From Ruditapes philippinarum (taxonomy: Eukaryota): a stretch of 64,000 nucleotides of DNA. Of the stretch, positions 12,136 to 29,340 are shown piece by piece; the first letter of the stretch is position 1, and every line of letters begins with the position of its first letter. The notes beneath the pieces were generated by a model. That model did not search any database. It was not told where the DNA came from and saw only the letters and a list, made by a program, of their open reading frames with translations. A program made the translations under genes and the position numbers. The DNA is taken from contig NW_026865120.1 in the NCBI RefSeq assembly GCF_026571515.1, forward strand, positions 1 through 64,000, written 5' to 3'.

Positions 12136-14481
12136 ATGGCTGTCACAAAAGCATTCTTCCTATTGGGCTTGGTAACGATAGTCAATGGACATGGTCGGCT
12201 GATAGATCCGCCATCCAGGTCATCTGCATTTAGATTTGGCTTCAATACACCACCTAATTTTCTTCTGGACAAGCAACTAAATTGCGGAGGAGTCTGGGTA
12301 AGTTACCGGTCAAACTACCGTTACAAAGCATTATCAATATCATATCATTTATTATACCAACCATTTATTCGTTAAATTTGAGGAAAAAACAAATATTTAC
12401 ATAAAATGAGATGTTATTTGTACAACGTTTATTGGCATGGTTCTTACTAGTATTTACACATCTTGAAATTATGTAGCATGCAGTTTATCACGGTAAAATT
12501 TAAAATCACATTGTTTAAGATCTACGCTAACATAAATCTTCATATATTTATTTATTTGTTTACTGGAGATACATTTCGTTTTGAAGTAGGTTTTTTTTCG
12601 TTTTTTTTTCTTTTTTGTTTCTTTTTTTTTTACTTTTAGGGTGATAATTTGACTGCTTCAAGTAAGCAGTAACATATAAATTAAAAATATGTCGTCTTAT
12701 TCATATGTTTTAAATACACAAAAAGTAATATTCCTACCGATCATAATACATATAATCTATTCTTCAGGCAGGGCATGTATTATTACACATCTTACAGCCA
12801 AACGGAATGTTATCCAGCCTCAGCAGTTACATTTTATACTTGTACTCATATCTATGTTCATTTTATTCCGAATAAAGATATATTACTAACATGGTTAAAA
12901 CATTCGGTTTGGGTTCTTTTAAGAATCAGTGGCAGGTAAATCATGGTCGTTGTGGTGTATGCGGTGACCCGTACCAGGGTCCACGTAAAAACGAAGCAGG
13001 TGGGGTATACGCTACAGGAACAATTGTTCATACATATAAAGAGGGTACGCAGATAAATGTTGTAATTGGTAAGTGACTGTCTTATTCATGCAGTATGACA
13101 TTATCAATTGCAGAAAAAAGTATATGCATCTCTTGAACGGAACAGAATGCGAATGTAGGAACTATATCGATTTTAATGTTAATAGAGGATAGGTAAATAT
13201 GAGCTTGAAAAACGTTTATCATTTATCCTATAACTTGCGTAAGAGCATTCCTGTATATTTACATTACAGCAATGACGTTGATACAATGCATTCTTATTAC
13301 AATCACGATTTATTGTAACGGAATTCCGAATAATTTTACAATCTCAACAATATTGATACACTAAATTTATAAACAATTAATTCAAATATAATATTCAACT
13401 TATTTCATTCTGCTGAGTTCCTAGTAAAAGCGTATTATCTTACAGACATAACTGCCCCTCATGGCGGATGGTCCGAGTTTAGAATTTGTCCTAACAACAA
13501 CATTCATAAAGCTGTCACACAAGAGTGTTTTGATCGATATCTACTGGCGACACCTAGCGGAGAAACCAGATATATTCATCAACGTGAAGCAGCTAATATT
13601 ACAATCCCTCTCGTGCTTCCAAAAGGTCTAACTTGCTCGCAATGTGTTCTACAATGGAAATGGAATACTGGTATGTAAACAATTCAAATATCATGTATTT
13701 ATCATATGATTTTATATAATTTATTCGAGTAGTAGTTTAAAATATATATTTTGTGTATCTTAAAGTGACAAACGTTCATCATGTCGCTACTATATATTAC
13801 AAGAATAAAGTGTCGGAGGACCAAAAACCTAAAAACATAAAATTTGAATTTCTTACATAGATCACCTAAGCCTTTTAAAAGAAATATATGTAAAGGATAA
13901 TTTACATATATGTTGAAATTTTTTTAATCGTAATTCATGGTATTCTTAGCCTGATTTTAGTGACATAGGTTAAAAGGATGATTTTTTGGTCATTTTCCAC
14001 AGTTACAATAGTTACAATAATTATTCTAGAAAATATTGTTATCAAATAATCTGAAACATAGCAAACAAGTCTTTGAGCTAGACATACATCTAATGGAACA
14101 ATAATCTCAAAAAAATATTTCAAGTTCTGTCATGTCAAATTCCTTTTAAGCAAACAGTTCAGGCTGTAAAGCAACCGAATGCTTATTCCAGCTATCTGAC
14201 TATTAGAAAATGTTAAGATACTGAAATGCTTTAAACTATTGACAGTTTACTTATTAAATAGATAATAAAACTGTAACATATCTTATTTAGCCCATGATTA
14301 TAACTGTGACACAGTTACCAAAGAATGTTGCAAAGGTTGTGGACCACAGGAGCAATTCTACGGCTGCGCAGATGTCGCAATAATAAAGACATCAAGCGGT
14401 GAAACTTCGTCAACAACGAAAACGACAAATCTTCCTAATGAACCTGTCGGTTTCATTCCTATTGGAAACAATTTCCCTTAA
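12136..14481 (+). CDS. AA15-family lytic polysaccharide monooxygenase (chitin-binding type-4 fold), paralogue 1, 240 aa, secreted
   Basis: Exons 12136-12297, 12924-13068, 13446-13670, 14291-14481 (723 nt, GT-AG, phases 0/1/1). An 18-aa signal peptide ends TIVNG|H. Motifs: HGRLIDPPSRSS, CGVCGDP, NEAGG, TAPHGGWSEFRIC, CSQCVLQW, GCGPQEQFYGCADV. An S/T-rich tail ends PVGFIPIGNNFP*. Confidence 0.95.
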
Positions 14482-14984
14482 GCCGTCAGCAAGCGATTTC
14501 TATTTCTTGTTCTATGGAATTGAACGTGTTGTTTTGAGGGGAAAAGTTTGAAAACAGTTCAAATCAGTCACTGATTTTGCATGTTTGCTTGGGATTTGAC
14601 GGAAGAGACATGGCATCTGAAATGATGGACATTTAGATCGTTATAGTGAGGCAAAGTTATGTTTACATAGGAAATGTGCACATGAATGTAATTGGTCAAC
14701 AACGTAATAGAGTTTTGGAAGGGACATTTCATTGTACAGTTTTATTTCCATGTATTATTTGACAACTTGTATTGTAAATAAACCTTTGCTCTTTGTTTCT
14801 ACATGTACATTTGTATTTCTTTCAACATTTTGTCTAATGTTAGCTTTTTTATAACATGCGAAAAATGTAATATATTTACAATAAAAGCTTTTTTCTACAC
14901 TGACTTTTGGATGGTATATTTGTAGTTTTTTAAGTTTATTTAAAAACTTGTTTTCTATTAGTAAGATTGATTTTGTCAATTGTT

Positions 14985-15371
14985 TAATAGAAAGAGCATC
15001 GAAACACAAGGCTATCTGATGTTGCTTCTCGAGTATAAATCATATTGTCGAGTGTTTTGATGGTATTTCCTTTTTTTATCATAGACAAAAACAAAAACAC
15101 ATTCCCAGTCGTCACAATATAAAACCCCTGAAAAACGTAACCAATGAACGAGCATCTGAATATCGATCCCTTTCTCTGTCGTCAAAATACTTAAATCCCA
15201 GAAAAAAATATAAGCCAACCAATGTGCATGCTCTATTTCATTTCCAACAGACAATGTGATAACTAGAGTGCAGGTAACTAATACATGCACTCCAGTTAAC
15301 TCACTGCATATAATGTGTATACAATTTATCTCTGACACAATTTGAACACAAGGTCCCCAAACTATGATACA
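14985..15371 (-). repeat. About 380-bp dispersed repeat, inverted copy of 19888-20252
   Basis: The reverse complement aligns through tgtatcatagtttggggacc, gacgacagagaaaggga, tattcagatgctcgttcattggttac and gatgctctttctatta. Confidence 0.8.
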
Positions 15372-18269
15372 ACTTCCAGTTATATAGCCGACGGTACCTG
15401 TACTTGTAACAACATACACAATGTCTTAAAGTAATCATGAAGGAATAATGAAGGATATCAGTGTTTCTAAATAAACTATTAATAAGCATAGGTGTTGTGT
15501 CTTCTTTAATTAAGAAGCGCGACAAACGCTGCAACAAAACAAATATAAAATAAAATAACAAAAACAAAACGCAGCCTTATAATCAGAATGCTTCACTACG
15601 TTTGATTGGTGTAACCAGTATCTAATTATAAATCACTTTGTTTTTTGCAATTGAAATATCTGCAATAATAATATGCACTGCTCGGTTAACTTGTCATAAT
15701 TTTAATAAAATGGTCATAATGTCTTAATTCGTATGTATATTAAATGTCAAAGTTGTCTTGCTACACTATACGATTCCGAAGCAGACATTTGACGAATATC
15801 AGGATACCTGAATACGTGATGGCATTCTAATTCAAACTGAAGACGTGATGGCATTTCAATACAAACTGTTTATAGATAGGTTAAGTGTTCTTAAACAGGG
15901 TATTTTTTGTTGTAGATAATAACCATCCTGACAGGCCTTATACCTCTGTTACCAAGGCCAACATTGCTCCTAAAGAATTTGTTGACGGGACAGATGTGCT
16001 GTTTTGTCGGAAAAAGGTAACAGCCAGTTGTACTGACATATCCGATGAAAGTGTGCAAACAATTCTGACATATCGTGTGGAAACTCTAAAAGTTTTCGTT
16101 TAATGATTACCGCGGAAAAAAAGATCAATGAATAAAATGGGCCCATGGATCCCTGAAACGATACAATGGCTGCAACGTCGTGATATATTTCTAACTAGTT
16201 AAAGTGTGATATACATGTATTTCTTACTATTAAAAGTTGACTGACTAAACGTGTGTCCATATTTTGAGCCAAAGAGAAGAAGTTAGATATGGAGTGAAAC
16301 GATGATAAATTAAATATCTTATTCTAGTTAAAATGATCCTCACAATAATTATTGTTCGTTTCGTCATATTGCATTCGGGCAATAAAAGTACACATTAATT
16401 AAATTTCAATAAAGTGAAATAATATTTAATTTACAACAAGGATCGTCCTTGCAAAGGATGGTGAGGAGTAATGACAGTTGTTTTGGCCTTTGTTTTATAC
16501 TAAATGATCCCCGTATTAACATCGTGCATTTATCTCTATAACATTTTTTAATTCACAAGTCTCAAGAAAATGCTTTCTTGAAAAATCCAAAAGGTTCTCT
16601 AGGCTTTTCATCACAAAGGTACTAAATTAACACATTTTATCATCCTAATGGGCTTGTTAAAATCGTGACAGGATGTGTTTGGGTAAAGAGCGATACAGAA
16701 ATCCAAATGTAATGACAGAACTTCTTTCAGGACCCTCATGTTGCTTTTCGTTGACATTGGTTACCCTTTTTAAGAAAGGTTTGCATAAGGGTAAAGTAAA
16801 CTTATGTATAAAGCAAGGAAATGCTTGCTTGAAATTCAAACTATGTTAAAACATTTTGTTGTTAATCGTTTGATATCACACTCTTGTTCAAACCTTATTA
16901 GATAATGTTTAAGATATGTTTCTGTTACTGTTTTAATATGTGAGCACAAAGTTATGATTTTGTTGATGTCAGTTTTATTTTTGGATGAAATATTTACGAA
17001 ATATTCGAAAAATATCGAAGAAAAGACTATAGAATGATAAACATACAACAAATCAGGGAATGGCGCCTGCAATCTTGAACCGATCTTTAGAAAATATTTG
17101 GAGAAATTGAAAGACGTTCCTGAATATGGAAAGGTAACTGAACAGCTGCTTTATTGTAAAACAACACACACATTCATTGACTTGACTAAATTTGATGTTT
17201 TTTTGTTCCAGATTTTCTTTTCATTTTCTTTCAAGGCTTATATATATGCTATATACTAACCTCACAGAGGATAATAGCCATAGCTTGTCCCACAAAATTT
17301 GTATAATTTATAAAATATTATAGCAAACTTATCTATAAAAAAGTAAATTATTGTTATATTAACCCTGGAGTCAATATCAGATCTGTATGCATGTTTTCTT
17401 TTTTCTCTCAAAAAATCTATAATACATGTATGCATAAAATGTTAATGTTATATTTTTTTCCCGGTGACTTACATTGTAACCTGACGTGACGCCCATTTCA
17501 AAATGGCGACGCCCATACTGACGTCTTTTAAGGTTCGTCTCACAATTAACATTGCATGTTCTAGATAATAATGAAAAAAATGATAATTCTATTTATTTAC
17601 TAATCTTTGTTAAGCTATAATATTTGACTTTTTCTCAGCTAAATTCTAAATAGACGAGTACCTCTGTATAGACAATTTATAGTGCGCGTGAGTGAATGCG
17701 TGCGCGTGTGTGTTTATTGTTTTGAAACACTAGATAAGAGATCACCAATTTTTACATTAAAAGTTCACTAATTTGACCTTTGACAATACAGATATTTTAA
17801 TTTGCGGTACAAGGAAGTTGAAACATCAGAAAGAGTTAGCGTGTACTCCATTATATCAAAACTGTTCAAACGGTATCTAATTCCGTCCCTCTTTTTATCA
17901 CGGAAGTAAGATAGGTCTATCTAGTTCTTTTTCTCTTTGAGCTGTAAATATTTATGCTACTCGCCTTTGAAATAAGCATTCATTGTGTTATTTTAGGCAT
18001 ATTTTGTAATTTTAAACGCAAACATTACAAGCAAGTTTGCTAACCGTCTGAGAGAAGCTCGTGTTTATACTTAAACGTGTTTTGTCGCTTTAGTATGATT
18101 TTCAAAATTTATCAAACATTATAAAAAGGTATTGTGATTCATACAGACACATTCACAGAGAAAAAAGCTAAACCTTAAGTTTAGATCCAGAGAGTTTCTT
18201 AAGATGTATTTTTAAAGCAATTATTTTCATTTTACTTTTTTCGAGATACTCTTTTAGCAGTTTATCTGT

Positions 18270-18400
18270 GGCAACAGGGCCGAGTGATTTGCGCGTCGGC
18301 CTATAATTCAAGGGTTGCTTGCCTGGTGGGTTCAAATCCCGTCAGGGGTAAGCAAATGTTTTTTTTTTTCAACAAAAAAACTTTACACTCATAGCTTAGT
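18270..18400 (+). mobile_element. tRNA-derived SINE (CORE-type), truncated
   Basis: A-box ggccgagtga, B-box gggttcaaatccc, then aaactttacactcatagcttagta, as in the copies at 23.8 and 38.1 kb. Confidence 0.7.
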
Positions 18401-19887
18401 AATAATATCATGTCTTTTATTAAAGACAGATGGCGGGAAAGTGTATAACGTCTGTGTTGTATTGATACAACTGTGTTATAGCCAACAGTTACAGGTGTGC
18501 GTCAATATCTAAAGCTGCGAGTCGGATTGGTTGCTCATTGTAAATCATTTATACTTCAGATTAGACCTCAGGTAGAGTTACGCACACAATCTTGAAGCAA
18601 TGAAAACGTTTTTTTACATTCAAGCAGTTGTCGAATCTTTATTGTTTTCATGGCTTCAACTAAAAAAAATGTGAAGAGTATGCTATTTTTGGCCAGCTGA
18701 CTCTCGGTCAATATATAGGGACATTTTCTACTTCGTTATAATCGGCTTTTAAATTAGCAATGATTATGGATTTACTTTTACACATTTTAATAAAACTTTT
18801 CATTACAGTGAATATGGCGCCTCAACGGAGAGCCTATATTAAGATATAGAAAAATACATATAACTGAATTCTACGTTATACATTTAGCATCATTTATGAC
18901 ATTATTATGAAATGAACTCTTTAGAAGGAACGACATTAAATTTATATAAAGATTTTCATATTTATCTTATCTGTAAGAAGCATTTTTTGTAATGTCGCAA
19001 CTTGCGTGAGATTATATAACGATTGTCCATATGTTTGACTATAAATTATTAGCATTGTTTAAACTATTTATTGACATTTTTAAATATATTTCTATATCTA
19101 TTACAAGTTTGTAACTTAAACGTACAAGCCGACTTTTGTTAAGTTCATGTGGATTAATTAAATCAATGAGGTATTTTTTTATAATTGAATATAGTTATAT
19201 AACTGGAGGCGTAATATCTTCAAAAATCTAAAACGTTTTTGAGCCTTTCCTTTATAATGCGTAAATAACATATTAGTATAACTTGATTCATATTAAAATA
19301 TTTTTTCAAAATATAGGGATCAGTGGAGAGAGTTCTTTTCGAGCCAAGGCCACGTATCAATTGTTTATACTCAGGAGTGTGTTTAGTTTTGCTCAAACTT
19401 TCATCATCACATATTTGTTACAACTTAATATCTTTTTTCTAACTTTGTAACCTTTTTTAAATTATTTTTTATCCGCGAGGCATACACAACGAAACGTAAC
19501 GTTATATGTGACCAATACAAATACTGACGTTAGTAAATTTGATTTCTGTCTTTTTCGTTTCATTTTCTTTTCCTTCTTTATATTTGACATTACTTGTTGA
19601 CTAGTAAAAACATAAATTATAAACCACTTTTTCTATCTACATGTATAGATCAATTTTAGATGTACTGCCTGTAAGGGGTATGTTTTAACTGCTTGCATTA
19701 TTAATACTAACAAAGCTAAATTGTTTTCTTTTAATCTGGACAAAAAATAGCATTAATCATTTTAGAGAAATTCAAAATTAGTATTGATTGAATAATAGTG
19801 AACGGTGTAAACTATGAGTGCCGGCTGATCTTGGTCTGTACTGGTCACACTTGTATGTCTATTGCCGCCAGCGGACTAAAGGTTAAT

Positions 19888-20252
19888 TGTATCATAGTTT
19901 GGGGACCTTTCTGTTGAAAACGTGTCAGAGTTAAATCGCATACATATACATGCACACTGCGTTAACTGGAATGGATGTATTATTTACCAGCACTCCAGAG
20001 CATTGATTGGCTCATTTTGCCTGGGCTTTACTTATTGTGACGACAGAGAAAGGGAAAGCGGCAGAAATATCATATTCAGATGCTCGTTCATTGGTTACTT
20101 TTTTCTGGGGATTTATATTGTGACAACAGGGAACGTGTTGTTATGTTTGACTATGATACCAAAGAGAAAGAACACCAAAACACTCGGCAATCTGATTTAT
20201 ACGCCCCCTCGTACAACTCAGATAGCCTCGTGTTTCGGTGCTCTTTCTATTA
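19888..20252 (+). repeat. About 365-bp dispersed repeat, inverted partner of 14985-15371
   Basis: See the partner copy. It has two internal sub-repeats, each starting with ATTGG. Confidence 0.8.
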
Positions 20253-21198
20253 CATAGAGTGGACATATTTAGGATGACTTATCTGTAATACCTTTGAACT
20301 TGATGAACTGTTTACCGACATTTAAGAGAATGTTATCTTCTTGTCTGTCTATACAGCGGACTCAAACATTTGTAAATGGCTGTCAAAGTGTTGAAATACA
20401 TTAGCTATTTTCCATCCGGGTTTATGTATATGAGGTCATAGCGGAAAGTGAATTGTGCCGTCTTAAATACCGGAATATCTTGGTAACAGTACGATAACAT
20501 GTGTGTCTATAAAATGTACACAATGTACTATCAACTGTTTACAATGTATTTAATTTATTAACATCCTTATTATTCATAAGTTCATTTAGTACGTTTTATT
20601 TTCTTCCATGATTTATATCTGTGATTATAAACCCCATTGTAATGCAATATTTATTCTAAGAAATAGCTAAACATATTTTAAGCAGGAATGTTAAAGGTGT
20701 TATTTATATCATAAGTGATGAAATATACTAAAATTATTTCAAAATCTCTTACAATCACATTGTATTCATGTCTGAAGGGAGACATTTTTATTTTTTTTTA
20801 TAAATAAATGTAAAACTAAATCTCTTTTAATTAACGCGCATGAAATTGATATATAATTTTGTAAGAAAAAAGAAATGTCATCATTCCTTTTGAAAATATT
20901 AAACTTTAAATTTCTGTAGGTTAAGTAATGATATCGCGTCCTTTCAAAATTCTATGCTTTCGGTTAATGTTATTTTGTTTAATTTGAATCAAGATTCAAA
21001 CAAATATGTGTCTGAATTTTATGCTGTCCAATGTATTTTGTATCTTATTAATGACAAAAATAATAAAATGATTTAATGTACTTAAATTACGCTAAAATGA
21101 TATTTTTAAAGTCCCGCCTTTATATTTAATTTTAGGACATTTACAAAAAAATGAATGAAAAAAAAAAGAAATGAAAATTTTGTCTGTGTCTCCCTTTA

Positions 21199-22161
21199 TA
21201 CTGCCCTCACACATACCTCGCGACCTTACTGCGTCCTTACTGCGACCTTGCTACGACCCAGGACGCAGCACAGTCGCCATGGACGCAGCAGGGACGCAGC
21301 GAGGTCGTAGCGAGGAACCCAAGGACGCACAAGGTCGCAGACCGTCGGCGACTATTTTGAACATGCACAAAACAGTCGCAGAAACTCTGCGTTCTTGCTG
21401 AGTCCTGGTTAGGTCGCCGTGGGATCGCAGTGGAGTCGCCATAGTCGCAGCAGCATCGTAGTAAGGACGCAATAAGAACGCAATAGACGTAGTACACTCG
21501 TACTAAGGACGCCGCTGTTTCAACAGACTGTGGACCACTAGAAGACTGTTTGTATGCGTCTCCGCCAGTGGATGAAGCCGCGATTTCTACACACTGTGAA
21601 CCACTACCAAACTGCATATCTGAAGCGGCGACTGGGTCAACTTGTAGCACTTTAGAGACCCTCGCTCTTTTGCCTCGTCCGCCTCTCATCTTTGGAATAA
21701 TATGGATGATTTAACTTAATACTAATTAAATATACGTCTTCACTCGTTGAAGGTCAGACTCAGAATGAAATTTACTGGTAAAAAGTATTGTTTTTATAGA
21801 CGTAGCAAGAACGTAGTAGGGTCGTCGTACAGTCGCAGGACAGTCGCCGGACAAACGCAATAGTCGTCGTAGAGTCGCCGTAAGGACGCAGAGAACATAG
21901 CACAGTCGCAGCTGGGTCGCCGATGATCGCCGTGGGGTCGCCTTGGGGACGCAATACAGTCGCAGTGGAAACGCCATGGACGTAGAAGGGTCGTATTGAG
22001 GACATAGAGAAAACGTACTGAACACAAGACTGCAGAGCCCCGGACCGTCTGCGAGAGAAATTTTGGAAATTTGAAAGAAAACCAACGATTTTCGAAAGAA
22101 AAATGCTATTTTACTAGTTTTCAGGTCGCAGTAAGGTCGTGGTTTATGTGTGAGGGCAGCA
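21199..22161. mobile_element. PIF/Harbinger-type MITE (963 bp, GC-rich)
   Basis: TIRs TACTGCCCTCACACAT...ATGTGTGAGGGCAGCA, extended by cgaccttactgcg / cgcagtaaggtcg. TTA lies on both sides (21196-21198, 22162-22164). The interior is built of gtcgcag/ggacgca repeats and has no transposase. Confidence 0.85.
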
Positions 22162-22630
22162 TTAAAGCCGAACACGTTCCTGGCGCTGTTGGTATAACAG
22201 CTTCCATATCATGTATTGAAAATTTGAAGATAGAAAACGTCATAGCGCCTTTCTGGCCTTTTTAGTACAACCAATGTTGCATTTCACGAACAGAACTTGA
22301 AGTAAGAATCAACGTTTGCAAATATCTTCAATATGTTTATGTGTGTTTTTCAGTCTCTCCCGATGGATCTACCTGTTAAATTAGTAAACCGCCCCGCTTT
22401 TGGAAACCGGCTTTCACTCACGCCTGCTAGGGTACGTGAGGATGACGCACTTTTTCATTATCTCTCATGTACAGTCTCAATCAAACCGAGTCTGCAATTT
22501 TCATGTTATTTTGCTGTGATTAATGCTTCCGAGGGATAACTTTGTTTCCAGATATTTTTCTCTGTTTATTACGTATTATGCATTATGTATAATTTATTTA
22601 TTTGCAGATACTTAAACTGAATGAGAAAAA

Positions 22631-25600
22631 ATGGCATTTTCACTAAGAGGAAAGCCTATCTTCAAACTATCTATGTTCCTAACAACCCTGTTGTCAACTA
22701 CAACCATTGTCAAAGGTCACGGACGCTTGATGGAACCGCCTTCGAGGTCAACTGCTTTTCGATTTGGCTTTGCAACTCCTCATAACTATAATGATAATCA
22801 ACTTAGCTGTGGAGGATATTGGGTAGTTGATATAAAGTATTCGAATTTATGATAAATCTACTGGAAAATTATATTAAGTCCTTTGCAATTATTTAGACCT
22901 TAGTTTAAACTACAATGACGAGTAAAGCATATTGTCATGGCAGTTTATAGTCATGTTATCGTTAAAGGCCCTTTGAGCCCCAAAAGTGCTTAAATTCATA
23001 TTTTTCAAAAGCCTTTTACTCTTGATTTTTTGTTTTCTTTATCAAATAGGGCGTATTGACCAAATAGCAGTCGCCTTTTGCTTCTATGGCATAAAAGTAA
23101 TTATTTAAGTTAAAGTGATTAAGCATTTTGAATGGAAGTAAAAATTCCACTTCGTTTACATTTTGCCATATTTATGACATAAATTTCACTTCAAGGACTT
23201 CTCTGTTCAAATGATAAGCGCGTATCATGCTTCAGTTCCATTCTTATAACATTATAAAAACAATGCTTGCCTTTTTAGGGAAAATTATTAGTATTTATTT
23301 CTGCGGACAAATGTGCCTTTATTTACTCAAAAATACACACATAAAGAAAAGAAACAAATAAGTTTAAACTTATTTTACAAATTAATGCAACCCTATGTTT
23401 AGAATAATGGATCAGAGTTAGTATTTCAATGCTGAATACAATTTAAGCATATATTGATAATAAAATACACAAAGGTATTGTTCTTATTATTTGCAAACAG
23501 AATCAATGGGAACTGAATCAAGGACGCTGTGGTATTTGTGGGGATCCATACCAGGGTCCACGTGAAAACGAGGCTGGCGGGAAATACGCTAAAGGGACAA
23601 TAGTTCGCCATTACAAGGAAGGGCAGAACATAGATGTAGAAATTGGTAATTTATTATACATGTACGATATACAATAAACAGGAGTGTGGATGGTAGCGGG
23701 TTCAAGACGTATGGTCAAATCAAATGATTCTTGCGTTGGTTTACACAAATTTATGTTAGTTAGATTGTGTTGGAAGCAATAAGCATATTGAAACACTATC
23801 AAATCTTTTCCCGGAACCAACAAGTTCTAAGCAATGAGTGTAAAGTTTCTTGTTCAAGGAAACAACGACTTGCCCCTGACAGGGTTTGAACACACGCGGT
23901 CAGCAATCCTTAGATTACTAGTCCGATATGTTAACCGCCTTGCCACGCCGCATTGATTTGCCTTCTGGGGGGGAGTATGATAATTTTCTTTGCGCGGATC
24001 CAAATTCTATAGGCCTATATTTCAATACCCTTCGTTCCAATCGCCCAACTATTAGGTATCTAGCAAAGTTACGTATATATACTGGGATAAAATTAGTTTT
24101 TTTTTTGAGTGACTAATTATGTATTAACACAACAACTGATACTGGTCCGAAAAAGGTAACAGCCTTTTGACATTTTTTTTTAAACATATCTTGATAGATC
24201 TATTATTCTAAGCCTTGTACATTTCAAAAGTTTTGTATTATCAAATAATAAGCTTTTTATAAGAAAGTTAATGGGTTAAGTCTTTAAGACAAATAACAAT
24301 TTAGACATATTTATTATCTTCTTAGAATTGATGGTTGGACACGGTGGATGGTCAGAATTCCGGATATGCCCAAATAATAACATACACAAAGCAGCAACAC
24401 AACAATGCTTAGATAAATACCTTCTAGCGACACCTGGCGGACAAACTAGATTTGAACATGCGCACATGGAGATTGGTCTCCACAAATATGAATTAAAGCT
24501 TCCATCTGGGCTTACGTGCACTCAGTGTGTTCTACAGTGGAGATGGAACACTGGTAGGTGAAGTATATATCGATTCAATCAATCTTAACCAGTACGATAT
24601 CAAATGTAAGTCAGTCACCAATCCAGTGATTACACAGAGACATGTAATTGAAAATCGCAGACAGAAAAAAAGAAAAGTAAATATCCCCAACGCCATTTTG
24701 ATTTTTTATACCTTTACGGTATATATGCTTCAATGAAAAACTCCCAAAGACACCCTCACAGATAGTTCCTCCTTACATAACTTCGTATATAATTTTTCGG
24801 GATAATAAGGTGATATTGGATATTTCCCCTACGTCTCTTATAGGCTTACCTGTCCTTTGGTTAACCCATACAGCCATGTGTTATTCAAAGGTATATCTTC
24901 AAAATCATAGTATCATTATCCTATAATGCAAAACAAATTAAATGTTGTTTTTTTTTTCATTTTAACAAAAGTCATGCTTTAACAAGATAATTGATAAAGA
25001 TATGTTGAACTACATTTAGCGTAAAAGTAACTTTTATGACGCTATTTGGTTTATTGACGTCGTATCTTACGTCATATGACGTATTTACGAGAAATCTCTT
25101 TTTAAGTCCTATGTATTTGAGAGGGGGGAATAGTGTGAAGCGTGTTAGAATTAATGGTATATTATCGCTCATTTGCCTTTACATATGTATATAAAAGTGA
25201 TTTAAAGACACATATCGGAAATCTAAAGATTCACCCTTACATTTTATACAACTGACAGATCTGATTTCGGTACAAAACAATCACTTTTTAAGTTGAAAGA
25301 AAAATAGGCCAGCTGAGTTACGCATTACCTAATGTACGACATAACTTTGCTATATTTGTGATTCTCAAACTTTTATATGTTGTAAAATTTCAGATTCTAA
25401 CAACAATTGCAATTTTGTTACCCACAAGAATTGCTGTAACGGTTGCGGACCTCAAGAACAATTCTACGGTTGTTCAGATGTATCAATCGAACGTGCCACA
25501 AATATCGTACATTACGCGTCACAAACAACGCCACGTGCTCCACCACATCCGTTTCAAGAAAGAGTTACTAGACCAGAGAGACCAATGGGTTTCATACCAA

Positions 25601-25647
25601 TAGATGTAATGGGTCGTTATTTGAAGGAAGCCAAAATAAAAACATAA
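22631..25647 (+). CDS. AA15-family LPMO, paralogue 2, 272 aa, secreted
   Basis: Exons 22631-22822, 23501-23645, 24326-24553, 25394-25647 (819 nt, same phases as paralogue 1). The signal peptide ends TIVKG|H. Motifs: HGRLMEPPSRST, NYNDNQLSCGG, CGICGDP, LMVGHGGWSEFRIC, CTQCVLQW, GCGPQEQFYGCSDV. A P/T/R-rich tail ends PMGFIPIDVMGRYLKEAKIKT*. Confidence 0.95.
23750..23952 (-). mobile_element. tRNA-derived CORE-type SINE in LPMO2 coding intron 2
   Basis: Reverse complement reads gcgtggcaaggcggttaac...gtgttcaaaccc...gtttccttgaacaagaaactttacactcattgcttag...gttggttccggg. Confidence 0.8.
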
Positions 25648-26140
25648 AAAATATCAATTACACATGAATACATAATCATGTTTTACATAGTTAACAAAGT
25701 TTTAAATGAATTTTAGTAAAGTTTGATGCCCTTGATTCTTCTTTTATTTGATCTGACATTTTGCTATTTCAAAATTTCATCCTTTTTGATAATAATTTTA
25801 TATAACATTAAATATTTACAGCTAAAATTAATTATAAAGAAAGGATGTAAAAATCTTTATTTCTGTTTGGAAATACAGGAATTTAGACTGCTTTTGGATT
25901 CATTTTTTCCATTTATATTCTGACTCATTCTTGAATCTATAAACCACAAACGTCTTTATTTCATAGAAATGAGCAGTTTCCTCCTTCACTCTGTTATCAG
26001 CATCTTAAGTATCAATTCTACATTTCCTGTAATATAATTGGCGGAATACACCCGGAATAAAATTTTAAAGATAAATTTTAAATTAATAACAAGACGATAA
26101 TCTTGCTGTCAAACAAAGGTGCGCACGTGAAGTACATTCG

Positions 26141-26208
26141 TATATATATATATAACTGACTCTGCCAAACATTTCATACAGAGATAACTGGACAATCATT
26201 GAAATAAG
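26141..26208 (+). promoter_or_regulatory. Probable TATA box and 5' UTR exon of LPMO3
   Basis: A (TA)n-TATAA tract at 26141-26155, donor aag|gtaggt at 26208/26209, and acceptor tttacag at 27071 before ATG 27099. This is the same layout as LPMO1. Confidence 0.5.
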
Positions 26209-26689
26209 GTAGGTGATTTTTATTGCTCATTCTTTTTAAGTAAAGAAATAAAATGACAATTTCGATCCTGTTAATATCGGTGTTGCATCGGAAATAATAT
26301 TATGCCTCAGAACCGAATAAACTTTAACTTCTTAAAGAACCTGTAACTCAATGTTTATGGTTTTATATAATAAATATAATGCCCAAATGGAAATGTATCA
26401 ATATTGTAAGTTCCAAAAAGCATTAAAGATATTACCGAATTTACGTTTCGTGTTAATAAAGGGTGGTATTTAGAAATTTGTTTTCTAACACAAATATTTC
26501 AATAAGAAATGAATGCAATATATTTTGATGATTAAATATAATGTGTACAAATATTTCAATGTTTGAAAATTGTTTAGAAACTTAATTATATACATATATA
26601 TAATTTCACTAAAGTGTAGTAACTATCTTAATTACAACATACAGAATTTTTAAGCAAGGGCATACATGAATTTTATAAGGTATAATTAA

Positions 26690-26943
26690 TGATATTAGCG
26701 TATGTTAGATGCTTGTAACCTGCAGAAATATCGATAAATGTGAAAAGATTTGTCATCAATTAGCAAAAATGTAAACAAAATAGTATTTTGACTTCAATAT
26801 ATAAGAATAATAATTTCTAAAAAGCAACAGAAGCAAAAGATGCTTCAGGTAGCTGGCCAATGAGAAACTTTCTTGAAACTTTTGAAATACATTAAAATAA
26901 TAAAAAGATTTTGAGAAAAATATAAATCATAATGGGCCTTTAA
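26690..26943 (+). mobile_element. TTAA-flanked MITE, partial copy (same family as 11230-11585)
   Basis: ttagatgcttgtaacctgcag...aaaatgtaaacaaaatagtattttgac...ggccaatga...gggcctttaa is collinear with the copy upstream of LPMO1. Confidence 0.65.
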
Positions 26944-27098
26944 GGAAGGTTGTTATTTTAACAAACAAACTCCATAATATACAAGCAAATCTTAACCTTT
27001 ATAATTATCTTGTGTCTTTGACAGATTCTTGTAAAGTTTTCTTTACTTTCATTCTTTTCGAACATTTACAGATAACTACAAAACTGAAAAAGAAAGAA

Positions 27099-29340
27099 AT
27101 GCAAGGAAATATGTGGATAGTTTCTTCTGTTGTGTTATTGAGTCTGATCAATTTTGTTACGGGGCATGGACGGCTTATAGACCCTCCATCTAGATCTAGT
27201 GCACACAAACATGGATTCCCCTTAATACCAGTAAATACTATGGATCATCAATTGAATTGCGGAGGTTTCTGGGTAAGGCAATTTATCAGGCCGTTATTTA
27301 TCTATTTATTTATTTATTATTTTGAAAAAGGTTATGCGACACTGTCTTTGAATTTATCGGCCATTTCTCTATAAACCGGTGTTATTGACGATAATGACCG
27401 TTCTAGCTCAGTTTCCATCACTTTAGTTAAAACAAAAAGAATAATCATATGTAAATAATAAAGCATCAAATACTACAATTACAGTGTAAAGTAGCAAGTT
27501 TAAAAGTAATTAACGCAGTTGATGTTTTTCCCATTTGTTTCCGCATAGACATGGCTACTATATGAATTATTCAAAATAACATCAATTATGCTTTCAAGTT
27601 AATTTCATGAGAACATATCGTTAAGGTTTGCATAGTGTGACACTTACATTAACATTTGATAATACACTTGCTCTAATATTTCAGAATCAATGGGGAGTTA
27701 ATCAAGGTCGTTGTGGTGTTTGCGGGGATCCATATCAAGGTCCTCGTGAAAACGAGGCTGGCGGGAAATACGCAACAGGAACAATAGTACACACTTATAC
27801 AGAGAATGCGCAGATAATTGTTGAGCTTGGTATGATTGTATTTATAGGTTGATAAATATAACTGTTACTGTATCGTCTTTATTATAATATTAAGCACTGT
27901 AGATTTAATAAGAAGACAGAGCGGAGGTCAGTAGTCTTAATTGCAGATAATTTCGTTAGATTCAAAAGTCAAACTGTATAAAGGTCATGTCACGACTTTC
28001 CAGCCGTACTGATGGCAGGATGGCTTTAGGTATAAAGCTAATTCTTTTTTCAGGCACATGCGTATAACAAGCTAGCTTGATAGTTTCTCAAATGAAATAA
28101 TTAATAGCACAACTAAAGAGCTAGCGGGGAACTAATCCGAAGTCAGCGGCCTTGTTCACAGGACCTCTTACTTTATTAATAAGCATGCCGCAGAAATATT
28201 GGGACAGTTCATTAAATGTGCTCCTCATTTCAGATATAACTGTTGCACATGGTGGATGGTCGGAATTCCGAATTTGTCCCAACAACGACGTACATAAACC
28301 TGTCACGCAACAGTGCTTAGACAAGTTTATTCTAGCGTCACCTAGTGGCGATACCAGATACATACACCAGCGAAAAAGAGGCACATTAAGGATTCCACTT
28401 GTTTTACCACCTGGTCTAACATGCACTCAGTGTGTTTTACAATGGAAATGGAACGCTGGTTAGTAATAATCTCATTATATTCCATATCTAATACAAATCT
28501 TTGTATACTAAAGAAGGGGAGTTGGTTGGATCGATTCGTTTTCCGAAGAACTAATTTTCTTACCTAGTTAATGTAAATGGCATTTTATAAATCTTCAAAT
28601 ATACGTTCTGTCAAGTATGTTAATCTAACAAAAATTACAGAACTATGTAGCGAATTTCAAAGTATACCACTAAAAAAGCGACGGATTCAATCATACCGAT
28701 TGAATTTTTCACCATTTTCTTGCTAAATTTGTCGCCTTGGTTTATGACCGCTTTATATTCAAAACTATAAATTGCAAGTGTTAAGGGTTTAAATCAATCT
28801 CACCATCTCGACTCTTTCCGTCAATAAGTATTTAGTATGGAAGTCAAAATACTACTTTGTTTTCATTTTGCTTTCTTTACGGCACAAAGCTGCATGTTCA
28901 GTGCTAATTTTTTTCAGTCGTAAAACATCTTACGTGCACTTAATGCATTATGAAAACATTATTAAACATTTCTAATTAAAATGTATTTCTGAGGCATTAT
29001 GTGCCTTTAAAAGAAATATGGAAACAAAACATAATCTTATGTATTGTACATTACAGCCAGTAATTTCAACTGCGATCCAATCACCCACAAATGCTGTAAG
29101 GGTTGTGGCCTGCAAGAACAGTTCTACGGCTGCGCTGATATATCTATAATAAAACCATACAGGCCACCAACAATCAAACCATACAACGGACAATGGGCAT
29201 TCAACCATATTACAACTGTGAAATCAGACAGCGCGAAAATTGCATCAAAACCTACCACAGTGAAACAAAATTTCATTCCTCCGTTTAATCGTCAAACTCA
29301 ACCATATGGCTTTATTCCGATCTTCAATCGCCGTGGTTAA
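27099..29340 (+). CDS. AA15-family LPMO, paralogue 3, 275 aa, secreted
   Basis: Exons 27099-27272, 27685-27829, 28234-28458, 29057-29340 (828 nt). The signal peptide ends NFVTG|H. Motifs: HGRLIDPPSRSSAHKHGF, CGVCGDP, ITVAHGGWSEFRIC, CTQCVLQW, GCGLQEQFYGCADI. The tail ends PYGFIPIFNRRG*. AATAAA occurs at about 29387. Confidence 0.95.
28840..29010 (-). mobile_element. TTAA-flanked MITE fragment in LPMO3 last intron
   Basis: gtcaaaatactactttgttttcattttgct...tttctgaggcattatgtgcctttaa matches 62303-62493 and the reverse complement of the 11.3 and 26.7 kb copies. Confidence 0.65.

What the first reader, a model, noticed from the sequence alone, without database searches (positions are those of the whole stretch)
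12190..29140. Substrate-face aromatics of AA15 are systematically replaced in all three LPMOs
Seen vs my recalled mollusc/arthropod AA15 consensus (SSxWRxGF; NYxDxxL[FY]CGG; [AT]GN[SN]WG). The WR Trp is F/F/H. The NY Tyr is F/Y/T. The L[FY]CGG aromatic is N/S/N. The GNxWG motif becomes AHDYN/DSNNN/ASNFN, and KG[YW]FEF becomes GGWSEF. The copper ligands stay intact. Inference: these aromatics line the flat polysaccharide-binding face, so this clade may act on a substrate other than crystalline chitin, or serve as a Cu-binding/oxidase protein. This would be an uncharacterised LPMO subtype.
Basis: partly seen in the sequence, partly recalled or inferred. Interest (0 to 1): 0.8.

Follow-up and report, generated by a model that had tools for sequence, protein, structure and literature searches.

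The report
Clam AA15 LPMO trio, remodelled face
Three neighbouring, expressed clam genes encode copper enzymes of the known AA15 (LPMO) family and belong to an unstudied clam-specific branch. That branch has changed some, but not all, of the aromatic residues thought to grip chitin, so the claim that every such residue was replaced is overstated.

Summary
The window holds three tandem + strand, four-exon AA15 LPMO genes: G1 12136-14481, G2 22631-25647 and G3 27099-29340. G3 is 99.5% identical over its catalytic exons, and identical in its tail as read by eye, to NCBI 'uncharacterized protein LOC132727913 [Ruditapes philippinarum]'.

- Published structural work places only positions 18, 24 and 166 (TdAA15A numbering) on the flat face.
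- At those positions G1 has F/F/Y, G2 has F/Y/N and G3 has F/T/F. G1 keeps all three aromatics and the other two keep two.
- Position 30 is Asn in the characterised TdAA15A itself. Trp94 is retained. Phe95→Ser probably points into the β-sandwich core.
- Loss of aromaticity is not enriched over background divergence (6/39 versus 27/237 cells, p=0.43).

What is real is a heterodont-bivalve subclade (Ruditapes, Mercenaria, Mactra, Mya, Dreissena; support 96). It has invariant Ser95, Asn167 and Cys168, an inferred ancestral Asn166, and fewer face aromatics (about 1.4 versus 2.7 of 3). The His brace, Glu182 and the axial Phe are intact, dN/dS is about 0.11, and spliced RNA contigs support G2 and G3.

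The genes are most likely active secreted LPMOs with a more polar binding face. Their substrate is untested.

The parts
12136..12297 (+). G1 exon 1: signal peptide (MAVTKAFFLLGLVTIVNG) and the mature N-terminus from His1 (12190). It carries SSAFRFGF and NFLLDKQLNCGG. The donor is GTAAGT, phase 0.
   Evidence: exon aligns to 5MSZ residues 1-33, E=4.6e-5
12924..13068 (+). G1 exon 2: NQWQVNHGRCGVCGDPYQGPRKNEAGG...NVVI, ending in phase 1.
   Evidence: aligns to 5MSZ 37-83, E=7.8e-9
13446..13670 (+). G1 exon 3: D-ITAPH(91)GGWSEFRIC...LQWKWNT, with Ala89, His91, Trp94 and Ser95.
   Evidence: 5MSZ 87-163, E=1.3e-18; Pfam LPMO_10 at 25.4 bits, above the 23-bit cut-off
14291..14481 (+). G1 exon 4: AHDY(166)NC...CCKGCGPQE(182)QF(184)YGCADV, then a Ser/Thr-rich tail ending ...PVGFIPIGNNFP and the stop codon.
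   Evidence: G1's splice junctions have no RNA test here; they are inferred from GT..AG sites, the same intron phases as G2/G3, and Mercenaria P0157 (TAHDYNC).
22631..22822 (+). G2 exon 1: signal peptide and His1 (22718), with STAFRFGF and NYNDNQLSCGG.
   Evidence: an RNA contig loose end at 23500 carries the end of exon 1
23501..23645 (+). G2 exon 2
   Evidence: spliced joint 23645|24326 with GT..AG in run X1, which is recorded only as 'RNA?'
24326..24553 (+). G2 exon 3: E-LMVGH(91)GGWSEF...LQWRWNT, with Val at position 89.
   Evidence: joint 24553|25394 with GT..AG in RNA-seq contigs of X9 and X1
25394..25647 (+). G2 exon 4: DSNN(166)NC...CCNGCGPQEQFYGCSDV, with a tail ending ...PMGFIPIDVMGRYLKEAKIKT and the stop codon.
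   Evidence: an X9 RNA contig runs unspliced from 25393 to 25677; the tail matches Mercenaria P0152
27099..27272 (+). G3 exon 1: MQGNMWIVSSVVLLSLINFVTG and His1 (27165), with SSAHKHGF and PVNTMDHQLNCGG.
   Evidence: reads the same as P0160; joint 27272|27685
27685..27829 (+). G3 exon 2
   Evidence: joints 27272|27685 and 27829|28234 in X9 and X1
28234..28458 (+). G3 exon 3: D-ITVAH(91)GGWSEF...LQWKWNA, with Val at position 89.
   Evidence: joint 28458|29057
29057..29340 (+). G3 exon 4: ASNF(166)NC...CCKGCGLQEQFYGCADI, with a tail ending ...PYGFIPIFNRRG and the stop codon.
   Evidence: reads the same as the C-terminus of P0160

Best explanation
G1, G2 and G3 are three old tandem paralogues of a heterodont-bivalve-specific branch of the AA15 lytic polysaccharide monooxygenases, in what is almost certainly the Manila clam genome.

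Each gene encodes a signal peptide that, when cleaved, exposes His1. This is followed by a catalytic domain of about 190 residues with the TdAA15A fold, and then a short disordered tail ending in a GFIPI motif.

Shown here:
- the His brace (His1, His91), the second-sphere Glu182 and the axial Phe184 are intact;
- the proteins are under purifying selection;
- G2 and G3 are transcribed and spliced as modelled.

Inferred: they are active, secreted copper LPMOs that cleave a polysaccharide oxidatively at the copper site. That polysaccharide is most likely chitin, because an axial Phe with Glu182 is the arrangement of the chitin-active AA15s and AA10s.

The branch differs from canonical AA15 in four ways.
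- The 163-168 loop next to the copper is Asn-rich and is tied down by an extra Cys.
- The Trp/Tyr166 face aromatic was lost at the base of the branch, by parsimony on the tree. It is aromatic again in the lines of G1 (Tyr) and G3 (Phe).
- Tyr24 has been lost repeatedly.
- Phe95 behind the copper site is Ser.

The result is a more polar binding face with variable aromatic content across the paralogues. I read this as diversification of binding mode among paralogues, not as loss of LPMO function.
For: Gene models: same four-exon structure and intron phases (0, 1, 1) in all three genes.

Family membership:
- Exon-wise matches to TdAA15A (5MSZ), E from 1.3e-18 to 0.02.
- Pfam LPMO_10 on exon 3, above the cut-off for G1 only.

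G3 protein: it equals P0160, the R. philippinarum LOC132727913 product (99.5% over the catalytic exons; full sequence).

Structure: the AF2 model of P0160 has pLDDT about 97 over the catalytic domain. It matches 5MSZ with TM 0.93 and rmsd 1.2 A.

Active site: H1, H91, E182 and F184 are present in all three genes. F184 is the family norm, 177 of 185, and it is the state of chitin-active TcLPMO15-1 (PMC9156745) and AaAA15A (PMC8393829).

Clade:
- 13 proteins from Ruditapes, Mercenaria, Mactra, Mya, Dreissena and one metagenome, SH-like support 96.
- Ser95, Asn167 and Cys168 are invariant in the clade.
- Face aromatics at 18/24/166: the clade has 0 proteins with three, 6 with two, 6 with one and 1 with none. 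Elsewhere 135 of 185 have three.
- Aromatic/non-aromatic flips per unit tree length are higher in the clade: Y24 0.88 versus 0.20, W14 0.44 versus 0.03.

Selection and expression:
- dN/dS is about 0.11, with dS saturated.
- Spliced GT..AG joints lie exactly at the predicted G2 and G3 boundaries in RNA-seq contigs.
Against: - No activity, copper-binding or substrate data exist for any member of this branch.
- Ala89, which shapes the axial copper access, is Val in G2 and G3 and in most of the clade.
- Phe95→Ser sits close to the copper site and could alter redox behaviour.
- One Mercenaria member (P0259) has lost His91, so catalysis is not indispensable for every copy.
- G1's expression and splice junctions were not tested.
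- The RNA evidence comes from assembled contigs, so it shows neither expression level nor tissue.
- Whether residues 14, 30 and 95 are buried or exposed could not be measured, because no tool returned coordinates.
Confidence: 0.55

Rival explanations
1. One reading: the remodelled, aromatic-poor face marks a switch to a substrate other than crystalline chitin. Candidates are less ordered or partly deacetylated chitin, cellulose, or another dietary algal polysaccharide. On this reading the branch is a new LPMO specificity subtype.
For: - Asn166 is inferred ancestral for the clade and occurs in 0 of 185 other relatives. Gly167→Asn and Phe95→Ser are clade-invariant.
- Tyr24 has been lost at least four times within the clade.
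- The clade has been kept for a long time across Veneridae, Mactridae, Myidae and Dreissenidae under purifying selection. That argues the new face is functional.
- Canonical AA15 paralogues coexist in the same genome (L006, L010, L012), which leaves room for division of labour.
Against: - G1 keeps aromatics at all three published face positions, and G2 and G3 keep two.
- Aromatic loss is not enriched over background divergence.
- Chitin-active AA10s bind through a mostly polar L2 motif (PMC6771041).
- The axial Phe is the chitin-type state (PMC5823890, PMC9156745).
- No substrate data exist.
Confidence: 0.3
2. The substitutions carry no functional meaning. They are ordinary divergence of old duplicates, and the proteins behave as standard chitin-active AA15s.
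For: - Non-aromatic cells in conserved aromatic columns (15%) are not more frequent than changes in other conserved columns (11%), p=0.43.
- Most changes are aromatic to aromatic.
- Position 30 varies across the whole family and is Asn in TdAA15A.
Against: - Ser95, Asn167 and Cys168 are invariant in all 13 clade members. Ser95 occurs in only 2 and Asn167 in only 4 of 185 other relatives, while Cys168 is common elsewhere (46 of 185).
- The flip rate at Tyr24 and Trp14 is several-fold higher inside the clade. This points to a shifted constraint and not to uniform drift.
Confidence: 0.3
3. The proteins are non-catalytic His-brace copper-binding proteins, or oxidases that produce H2O2, and are not polysaccharide-cleaving enzymes.
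For: - One Mercenaria clade member (P0259) has Asn in place of His91 and Glu in place of Ala89. A copy can therefore persist without the brace.
- Face aromatics are reduced across the clade.
Against: - His1, His91, Glu182 and Phe184 are conserved in G1-G3 and in 12 of 13 clade members.
- No extra copper ligand of the kind seen in non-catalytic His-brace proteins was found.
- The fold is indistinguishable from TdAA15A.
Confidence: 0.07

Closest known systems
TdAA15A from Thermobia domestica (PDB 5MSZ), the only solved AA15; active on chitin and cellulose
   Same: - Same fold: TM 0.93, rmsd 1.2 A and 42% identity for the G3 protein model.
- His1 and His91 brace, Glu182, the W158-x-W160 motif, Asn at position 30 and an aromatic at position 18.
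   Different: - TdAA15A has Trp14, Tyr24, Tyr166, Gly167, Phe95, Ala89 and an axial Tyr184.
- The window genes have F/F/H at 14, F/Y/T at 24, Y/N/F at 166, Asn167, Ser95, A/V/V at 89 and an axial Phe.
- They also have one more Cys pair: 12 Cys in the catalytic domain by my own count, against 10.
Insect group I LPMO15-1 (TcLPMO15-1, LmLPMO15-1), chitin-active and needed for cuticle turnover (PMC9156745)
   Same: Axial Phe (F206 in TcLPMO15-1), Ala-x-His, and a secreted AA15 catalytic domain of about 192 residues.
   Different: - The insect proteins keep Tyr44 and Trp188 on the face. They also carry a C-terminal domain with two 6-Cys repeats.
- The clam genes have variable residues at 24 and 166 and only a short disordered tail.
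AaAA15A from Aphanomyces astaci, chitin-specific (PMC8393829)
   Same: Axial Phe, His brace, and an aromatic at the position-18 equivalent (Tyr19).
   Different: AaAA15A has all three face aromatics (Tyr19, Tyr26, Trp170) and an X474 C-terminal domain.
Canonical and intermediate AA15 paralogues of the same genome and of other bivalves (L006, L010, L012/P0162; L004/L005; P0163, P0184)
   Same: They belong to the same gene family in the same genome. The wider 'HGG' clade (24 proteins, support 97) shares Gly92, the Cys168/CC pair and mostly Val or Thr at position 89.
   Different: - The canonical copies keep SSMWR, NY.DNQL[FY]CGG, HKGW[FM]E[FY] and GNSWG.
- The intermediate copies keep Trp14 and Phe95 but already lack an aromatic at 166.

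Membership tests
AA15 LPMO (CAZy auxiliary activity family 15; Pfam PF03067 LPMO_10) | Significant sequence similarity to AA15 catalytic domains | tested here: met
   - Exon-wise phmmer against 5MSZ: 1.3e-18 (exon 3), 7.8e-9 (exon 2), 4.6e-5 (exon 1) and 0.02 (exon 4).
- The full G3 protein P0160 against 5MSZ: 1e-41.
- Pfam LPMO_10 on exon 3 of G1: 25.4 bits, above the 23-bit cut-off.
- PF03067 is precomputed for P0160.
AA15 LPMO | Signal peptide cleaved so that His becomes residue 1; second His completing the histidine brace | tested here: met
   A hydrophobic leader ends ...NG|HGRL...KG|HGRL or ...TG|HGRL, and His91 is present in ITAPH, LMVGH and ITVAH. The cleavage site is inferred from the sequence; no signal-peptide predictor was run.
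AA15 LPMO | Axial aromatic (Phe/Tyr184) and second-sphere Glu two residues before it | tested here: met
   PQEQF in all three genes. The family has Glu182 in 182 of 185 and Phe184 in 177 of 185.
AA15 LPMO | LPMO β-sandwich fold superposable on TdAA15A | tested here: met
   AF2 model of P0160: pLDDT about 97 over residues 23-220. Foldseek top hit is 5MSZ with TM 0.93 and rmsd 1.2 A; AA10, AA13 and AA11 structures follow.
AA15 LPMO | Co-planar aromatic residues bounding the flat face (Tyr24 and Tyr/Trp166; also Tyr18/19) | tested here: inconclusive
   G1 has F/F/Y (met), G2 has F/Y/N and G3 has F/T/F (one missing each). This feature is conserved in the family but does not define it: 50 of 185 other relatives also lack at least one.
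AA15 LPMO | Copper binding and oxidative cleavage of chitin or cellulose | not testable with these tools
   This needs recombinant protein and product analysis.
Heterodont-bivalve 'HGG-SEF / NNC' AA15 subclade (defined here) | Gly92, Ser95, Asn167 and Cys168, plus placement in the clade | tested here: met
   All three genes carry HGGWSEF and x-N-C. G3's protein sits inside the clade of 13 (support 96). G1 is 74-75% identical to Mercenaria P0154, P0155 and P0157, and G2 is 77% identical to P0152.

The most novel reading that the evidence does not exclude
The heterodont-bivalve AA15 branch is a new LPMO specificity subtype. Its Asn-rich, aromatic-poor 163-168 loop, variable position 24 and Ser95 behind the copper would adapt it to a substrate or chitin form that canonical AA15s do not attack. 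The three paralogues G1-G3 (face aromatics F/F/Y, F/Y/N and F/T/F) would then divide different substrates between them.
Probability: 0.25. Interest if true: 0.6.

Novelty: new variant of a known kind. Interest (0 to 1): 0.4.

Why it matters
Animal LPMOs have been studied almost only in insects. The searches of the held paper library turned up no paper on bivalve AA15s, although this clam genome alone has at least 27 AA15 exon-3 matches.

A conserved clam-specific branch changes the two mirror-image face aromatics and a residue behind the copper while keeping the catalytic core. It is a natural experiment on how LPMO binding faces determine substrate choice. It also gives three ready-made paralogues to compare.

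If the enzymes turn out to be ordinary chitin LPMOs, that would show these aromatics are dispensable in AA15, as they largely are in chitin-active AA10s.

Tried and rejected
- Mapping residues 14, 30 and 95 onto the 3-D surface. The structure tools return only scores, pLDDT and secondary structure, and no coordinates reach the script machine. Exposure could therefore not be measured. I used published statements and the strand register of the model instead.
- Searching the main text and supplements of PMC5823890 for the residues of the 'electron wire' (Trp14, Phe95). Nothing was found.
- Looking for the Mercenaria gene neighbourhood with the look-up of encoding contigs. Tandem arrangement in Mercenaria is suggested only by seven clade proteins whose listed contig has the same 74.1-Mb length.
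- Looking for annotated G1 and G2 proteins. Neither appeared among the 120 hits listed by each of the two word-index searches, which does not prove they are unannotated. The exact look-up would have needed a joined sequence and was not done.
Exons were searched one by one and added to alignments as separate fragments, and P0160 stood in for G3. One search printed the exon rows of each gene overlaid on one line of alignment columns. In effect this shows each gene's spliced catalytic domain, including the one-residue overlap at the exon 3/4 junction. It was for reading only and was not saved, typed or used as a query.
- I considered that G2 might splice to a C-terminal Cys-rich domain, as Mactra P0013 does. 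I rejected this because an RNA contig runs unspliced through the stop codon and the tail matches Mercenaria P0152.
- Raw RNA reads (X21, X23) gave only about 1-5x depth on the exons at 4-6% sampling and no joints. Splicing support therefore rests on assembled contigs.

Full report
WHAT IS THERE

The window is AT-rich animal DNA (GC about 0.31). It carries three + strand genes with the same four-exon structure and the same intron phases (0, 1, 1):
- G1: 12136-12297, 12924-13068, 13446-13670, 14291-14481.
- G2: 22631-22822, 23501-23645, 24326-24553, 25394-25647.
- G3: 27099-27272, 27685-27829, 28234-28458, 29057-29340.

Each gene starts with a hydrophobic leader that ends just before HGRL, so the mature protein begins with His.

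Exon by exon, the genes match the only solved AA15, TdAA15A (5MSZ):
- exon 3, E=1.3e-18;
- exon 2, E=7.8e-9;
- exon 1, E=4.6e-5;
- exon 4, E=0.02.
Exon 3 of G1 passes the Pfam LPMO_10 cut-off.

RNA-seq contigs from two runs show GT..AG joints exactly at my G2 and G3 boundaries: 23645|24326, 24553|25394, 27272|27685, 27829|28234 and 28458|29057. The first of these joints was seen only in X1, which is recorded as 'RNA?'. One contig runs unspliced through the G2 stop codon. G1 was outside the single 6-kb read-laying run, so it has no RNA test.

G3's catalytic exons are 99.5% identical to P0160, NCBI 'uncharacterized protein LOC132727913 [Ruditapes philippinarum]'. The printed P0160 sequence also reads the same through the tail. 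The genome is therefore the Manila clam or a very near relative.

The three catalytic domains are 66-73% identical to each other. Synonymous sites are saturated and dN/dS is about 0.11. These are old duplicates under purifying selection.

Exons were handled separately and P0160 stood in for G3. One search printed the exon rows overlaid in alignment columns, which in effect displays each spliced catalytic domain. That print was for reading only and was not used as a query.

CHECKING THE OBSERVATION

- SSAFRFGF / STAFRFGF / SSAHKHGF.
- NFLLDKQLNCGG / NYNDNQLSCGG / NTMDHQLNCGG.
- HGGWSEF in all three.
- Across the exon 3/4 junction: WNT-AHDYNC / WNT-DSNNNC / WNA-ASNFNC.

The recalled consensus is also correct as a majority rule. 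Over 185 full-length AA15 relatives outside the clade the counts are:
- Trp14 91%;
- Tyr24 85% (aromatic 91%);
- Phe95 84%;
- Trp/Tyr/Phe166 90%;
- Gly167 91%;
- Asn164 87%.
Canonical paralogues in this same genome show the motifs literally: L010 has SSMWRYGF, NYDDNQLYCGG, HKGWMEF and GNSWG.

Two items of the consensus are weaker:
- Position 30 is aromatic in only 73% of relatives. It is Asn in the characterised TdAA15A itself (LNCGS).
- The Lys of 'KG[YW]FEF' is present in only 35%, and the [YW] is unchanged (Trp) in all three genes.

WHICH OF THESE RESIDUES ARE ON THE SUBSTRATE FACE

- The TdAA15A crystal-structure paper names only Tyr24 and Tyr166. It describes them as co-planar rings that mirror each other across the His brace and bound the flat surface (PMC5823890).
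- The insect LPMO15-1 paper gives the equivalents Y44 and W188, with axial F206 (PMC9156745).
- The Aphanomyces AaAA15A model adds Tyr19, alongside Tyr26 and Trp170 (PMC8393829).

That makes three published positions: 18, 24 and 166. At these positions G1 has F/F/Y, G2 has F/Y/N and G3 has F/T/F. G1 has lost none of them as an aromatic, and G2 and G3 have each lost one.

Trp14 sits in a short helix (model residues 35-38) and is not mentioned in the papers I read. Its exposure is unknown.

Position 95 lies in the β-strand that follows His91. It is on the same side as the 96%-conserved Phe97 and the hydrophobic residue at 99 (strand 115-122 of the model). I infer that it points into the sandwich core near the axial Phe and not at the substrate. 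No tool returned coordinates, so this remains an inference.

IS THE PATTERN MORE THAN CHANCE

For the three window genes taken as 'loss of aromaticity', it is not. In 13 conserved aromatic columns, 6 of 39 cells are non-aromatic. In the 79 other conserved columns, 27 of 237 cells are changed (Fisher p=0.43).

At the level of the clade there is a real signal. A FastTree tree of 198 catalytic domains places G3's protein in a group of 13 with SH-like support 96:
- Ruditapes P0160;
- Mercenaria P0152-P0155, P0157 and P0259;
- Mactra P0013;
- Mya P0196, P0274 and P0276;
- Dreissena P0009;
- one metagenome protein, P0004.
This group sits inside a wider bivalve 'HGG' clade of 24 with support 97.

By signature and identity, G1 groups with Mercenaria P0154 and P0157 (TAHDYNC, Ala89), G2 with P0152, and G3 with P0160 and P0155. 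The three paralogue lines therefore predate the Ruditapes-Mercenaria split.

Within the 13:
- Ser95, Asn167 and Cys168 are invariant. Elsewhere Ser95 occurs in 2 of 185 and Asn167 in 4 of 185.
- Position 166 is Asn in 10 of 13 and in 0 of 185 elsewhere.
- Parsimony makes the clade root non-aromatic at 166. The Tyr of G1/P0157 and the Phe of G3/P0160 are later returns.
- Face aromatics at 18/24/166 number three in 0 of the 13, two in 6, one in 6 and none in 1. Elsewhere 135 of 185 have three.
- Aromatic/non-aromatic flips per unit tree length are higher inside the clade: Tyr24 0.88 versus 0.20, and Trp14 0.44 versus 0.03. These rest on small counts.

The order of events inferred from the tree is as follows. 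Gly92, Val/Thr89 and Cys168 came first in the HGG clade. Loss of the 166 aromatic and Phe95→Ser followed. Loss of Trp14 occurred only in the Mactra and Veneridae line.

THE ACTIVE SITE

- His1 and His91 are present in all three genes.
- The axial residue is Phe, not the Tyr184 of TdAA15A. Phe is the norm (177 of 185) and is the state of the chitin-active insect and oomycete enzymes.
- Glu182, two residues before the axial residue, is kept.
- Ala89 is kept in G1 but is Val in G2 and G3 and in 8 of the 13 clade members.
- One Mercenaria copy (P0259) has Asn for His91 and Glu for Ala89, so at least one copy has lost the brace.

The AF2 model of the G3 protein is confident (pLDDT about 97 over the domain). 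It fits 5MSZ with TM 0.93 and rmsd 1.2 A.

HOW IT MOST LIKELY WORKS

Shown: these are secreted AA15 domains with an intact copper site. They are constrained and, for G2 and G3, expressed.

Inferred: they are working LPMOs whose binding face next to the copper is more polar and Asn-rich, and whose aromatic content differs between the paralogues.

A polar face does not argue against chitin. Chitin-active AA10s carry an L2 motif that is more than 70% polar, whereas cellulose-active ones are hydrophobic there (PMC6771041). I therefore put chitin, possibly in a different physical form, ahead of a new substrate. The new-substrate reading remains open at about 0.25-0.3, and a non-catalytic role at under 0.1.

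NOVELTY

Three searches of the held paper library found nothing on bivalve AA15 subfamilies. All named clade members are annotated 'uncharacterized', 'hypothetical' or only 'chitin-binding type-4 domain-containing' protein.

This is a variant branch of a known family, not a new kind of system.

EARLIER NOTES OF THE SCAN

The scan had already noted the same stretch from three angles: the tandem cluster, the C-terminal GFIPI motif, and the Ala/Val-x-His variation. I confirmed the first and third, and saw the second in the window genes and in Mercenaria and Mactra orthologues.

Noticed in passing
window 14440-14478, 25585-25608, 29305-29337: All three genes end in a short Ser/Thr/Pro-rich tail that carries P-x-G-F-I-P-I close to the stop codon. 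The motif recurs in Mercenaria P0152 and P0157 (GFIPI, AFVPI). In Mactra P0013 (GGFIPIDVGG) it precedes a 6-Cys C-terminal domain that the venerid genes lack and for which no Pfam family is on record.
   Followed up: partly
window 13454-13456, 24334-24336, 28242-28244 (position 89): The residue two before His91, which shapes axial access to the copper in TdAA15A (Ala89), is Ala in G1 but Val in G2 and G3. It is Val in 8 of the 13 clade members, against Ala in 146 of 185 other relatives.
   Followed up: partly
G000 contigs C11029:5790-6014 (L004) and C9212:5380-5604 (L005): Two nearly identical AA15 loci lie on different contigs and are probably haplotigs of one gene. They represent the intermediate state: STMWRYGF, NADDHQLSCGG, ITVNHGGWFEF and WNTGN... 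The genome has at least 27 AA15 exon-3 matches in all.
   Followed up: partly
Mercenaria mercenaria protein P0259: This clade member has Asn instead of the copper ligand His91 and Glu instead of Ala89, and an odd long N-terminus. It is a possible pseudo-LPMO or a mis-modelled gene.
   Followed up: no
window 15033-15163 and 20072-20202: Inverted repeat arms of 131 nt, 85% complementary and 4.9 kb apart, lie between G1 and G2. ORFs over the arms encode similar peptides. This is probably a transposon, or two inverted copies of one.
   Followed up: no
window 23800-23999 and 28800-28999: Sharp depth peaks with many loose ends appear in all four runs, inside introns of G2 and G3. They behave like a dispersed, transcribed repeat and not like exons.
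   Followed up: no
window 25393 (loose end in run X1): One contig joins a G1-like end of exon 3 (…TGGAAATGGAATACT) to the start of G2 exon 4. It could be an assembly chimera between paralogue transcripts or an allele. It was not resolved.
   Followed up: no
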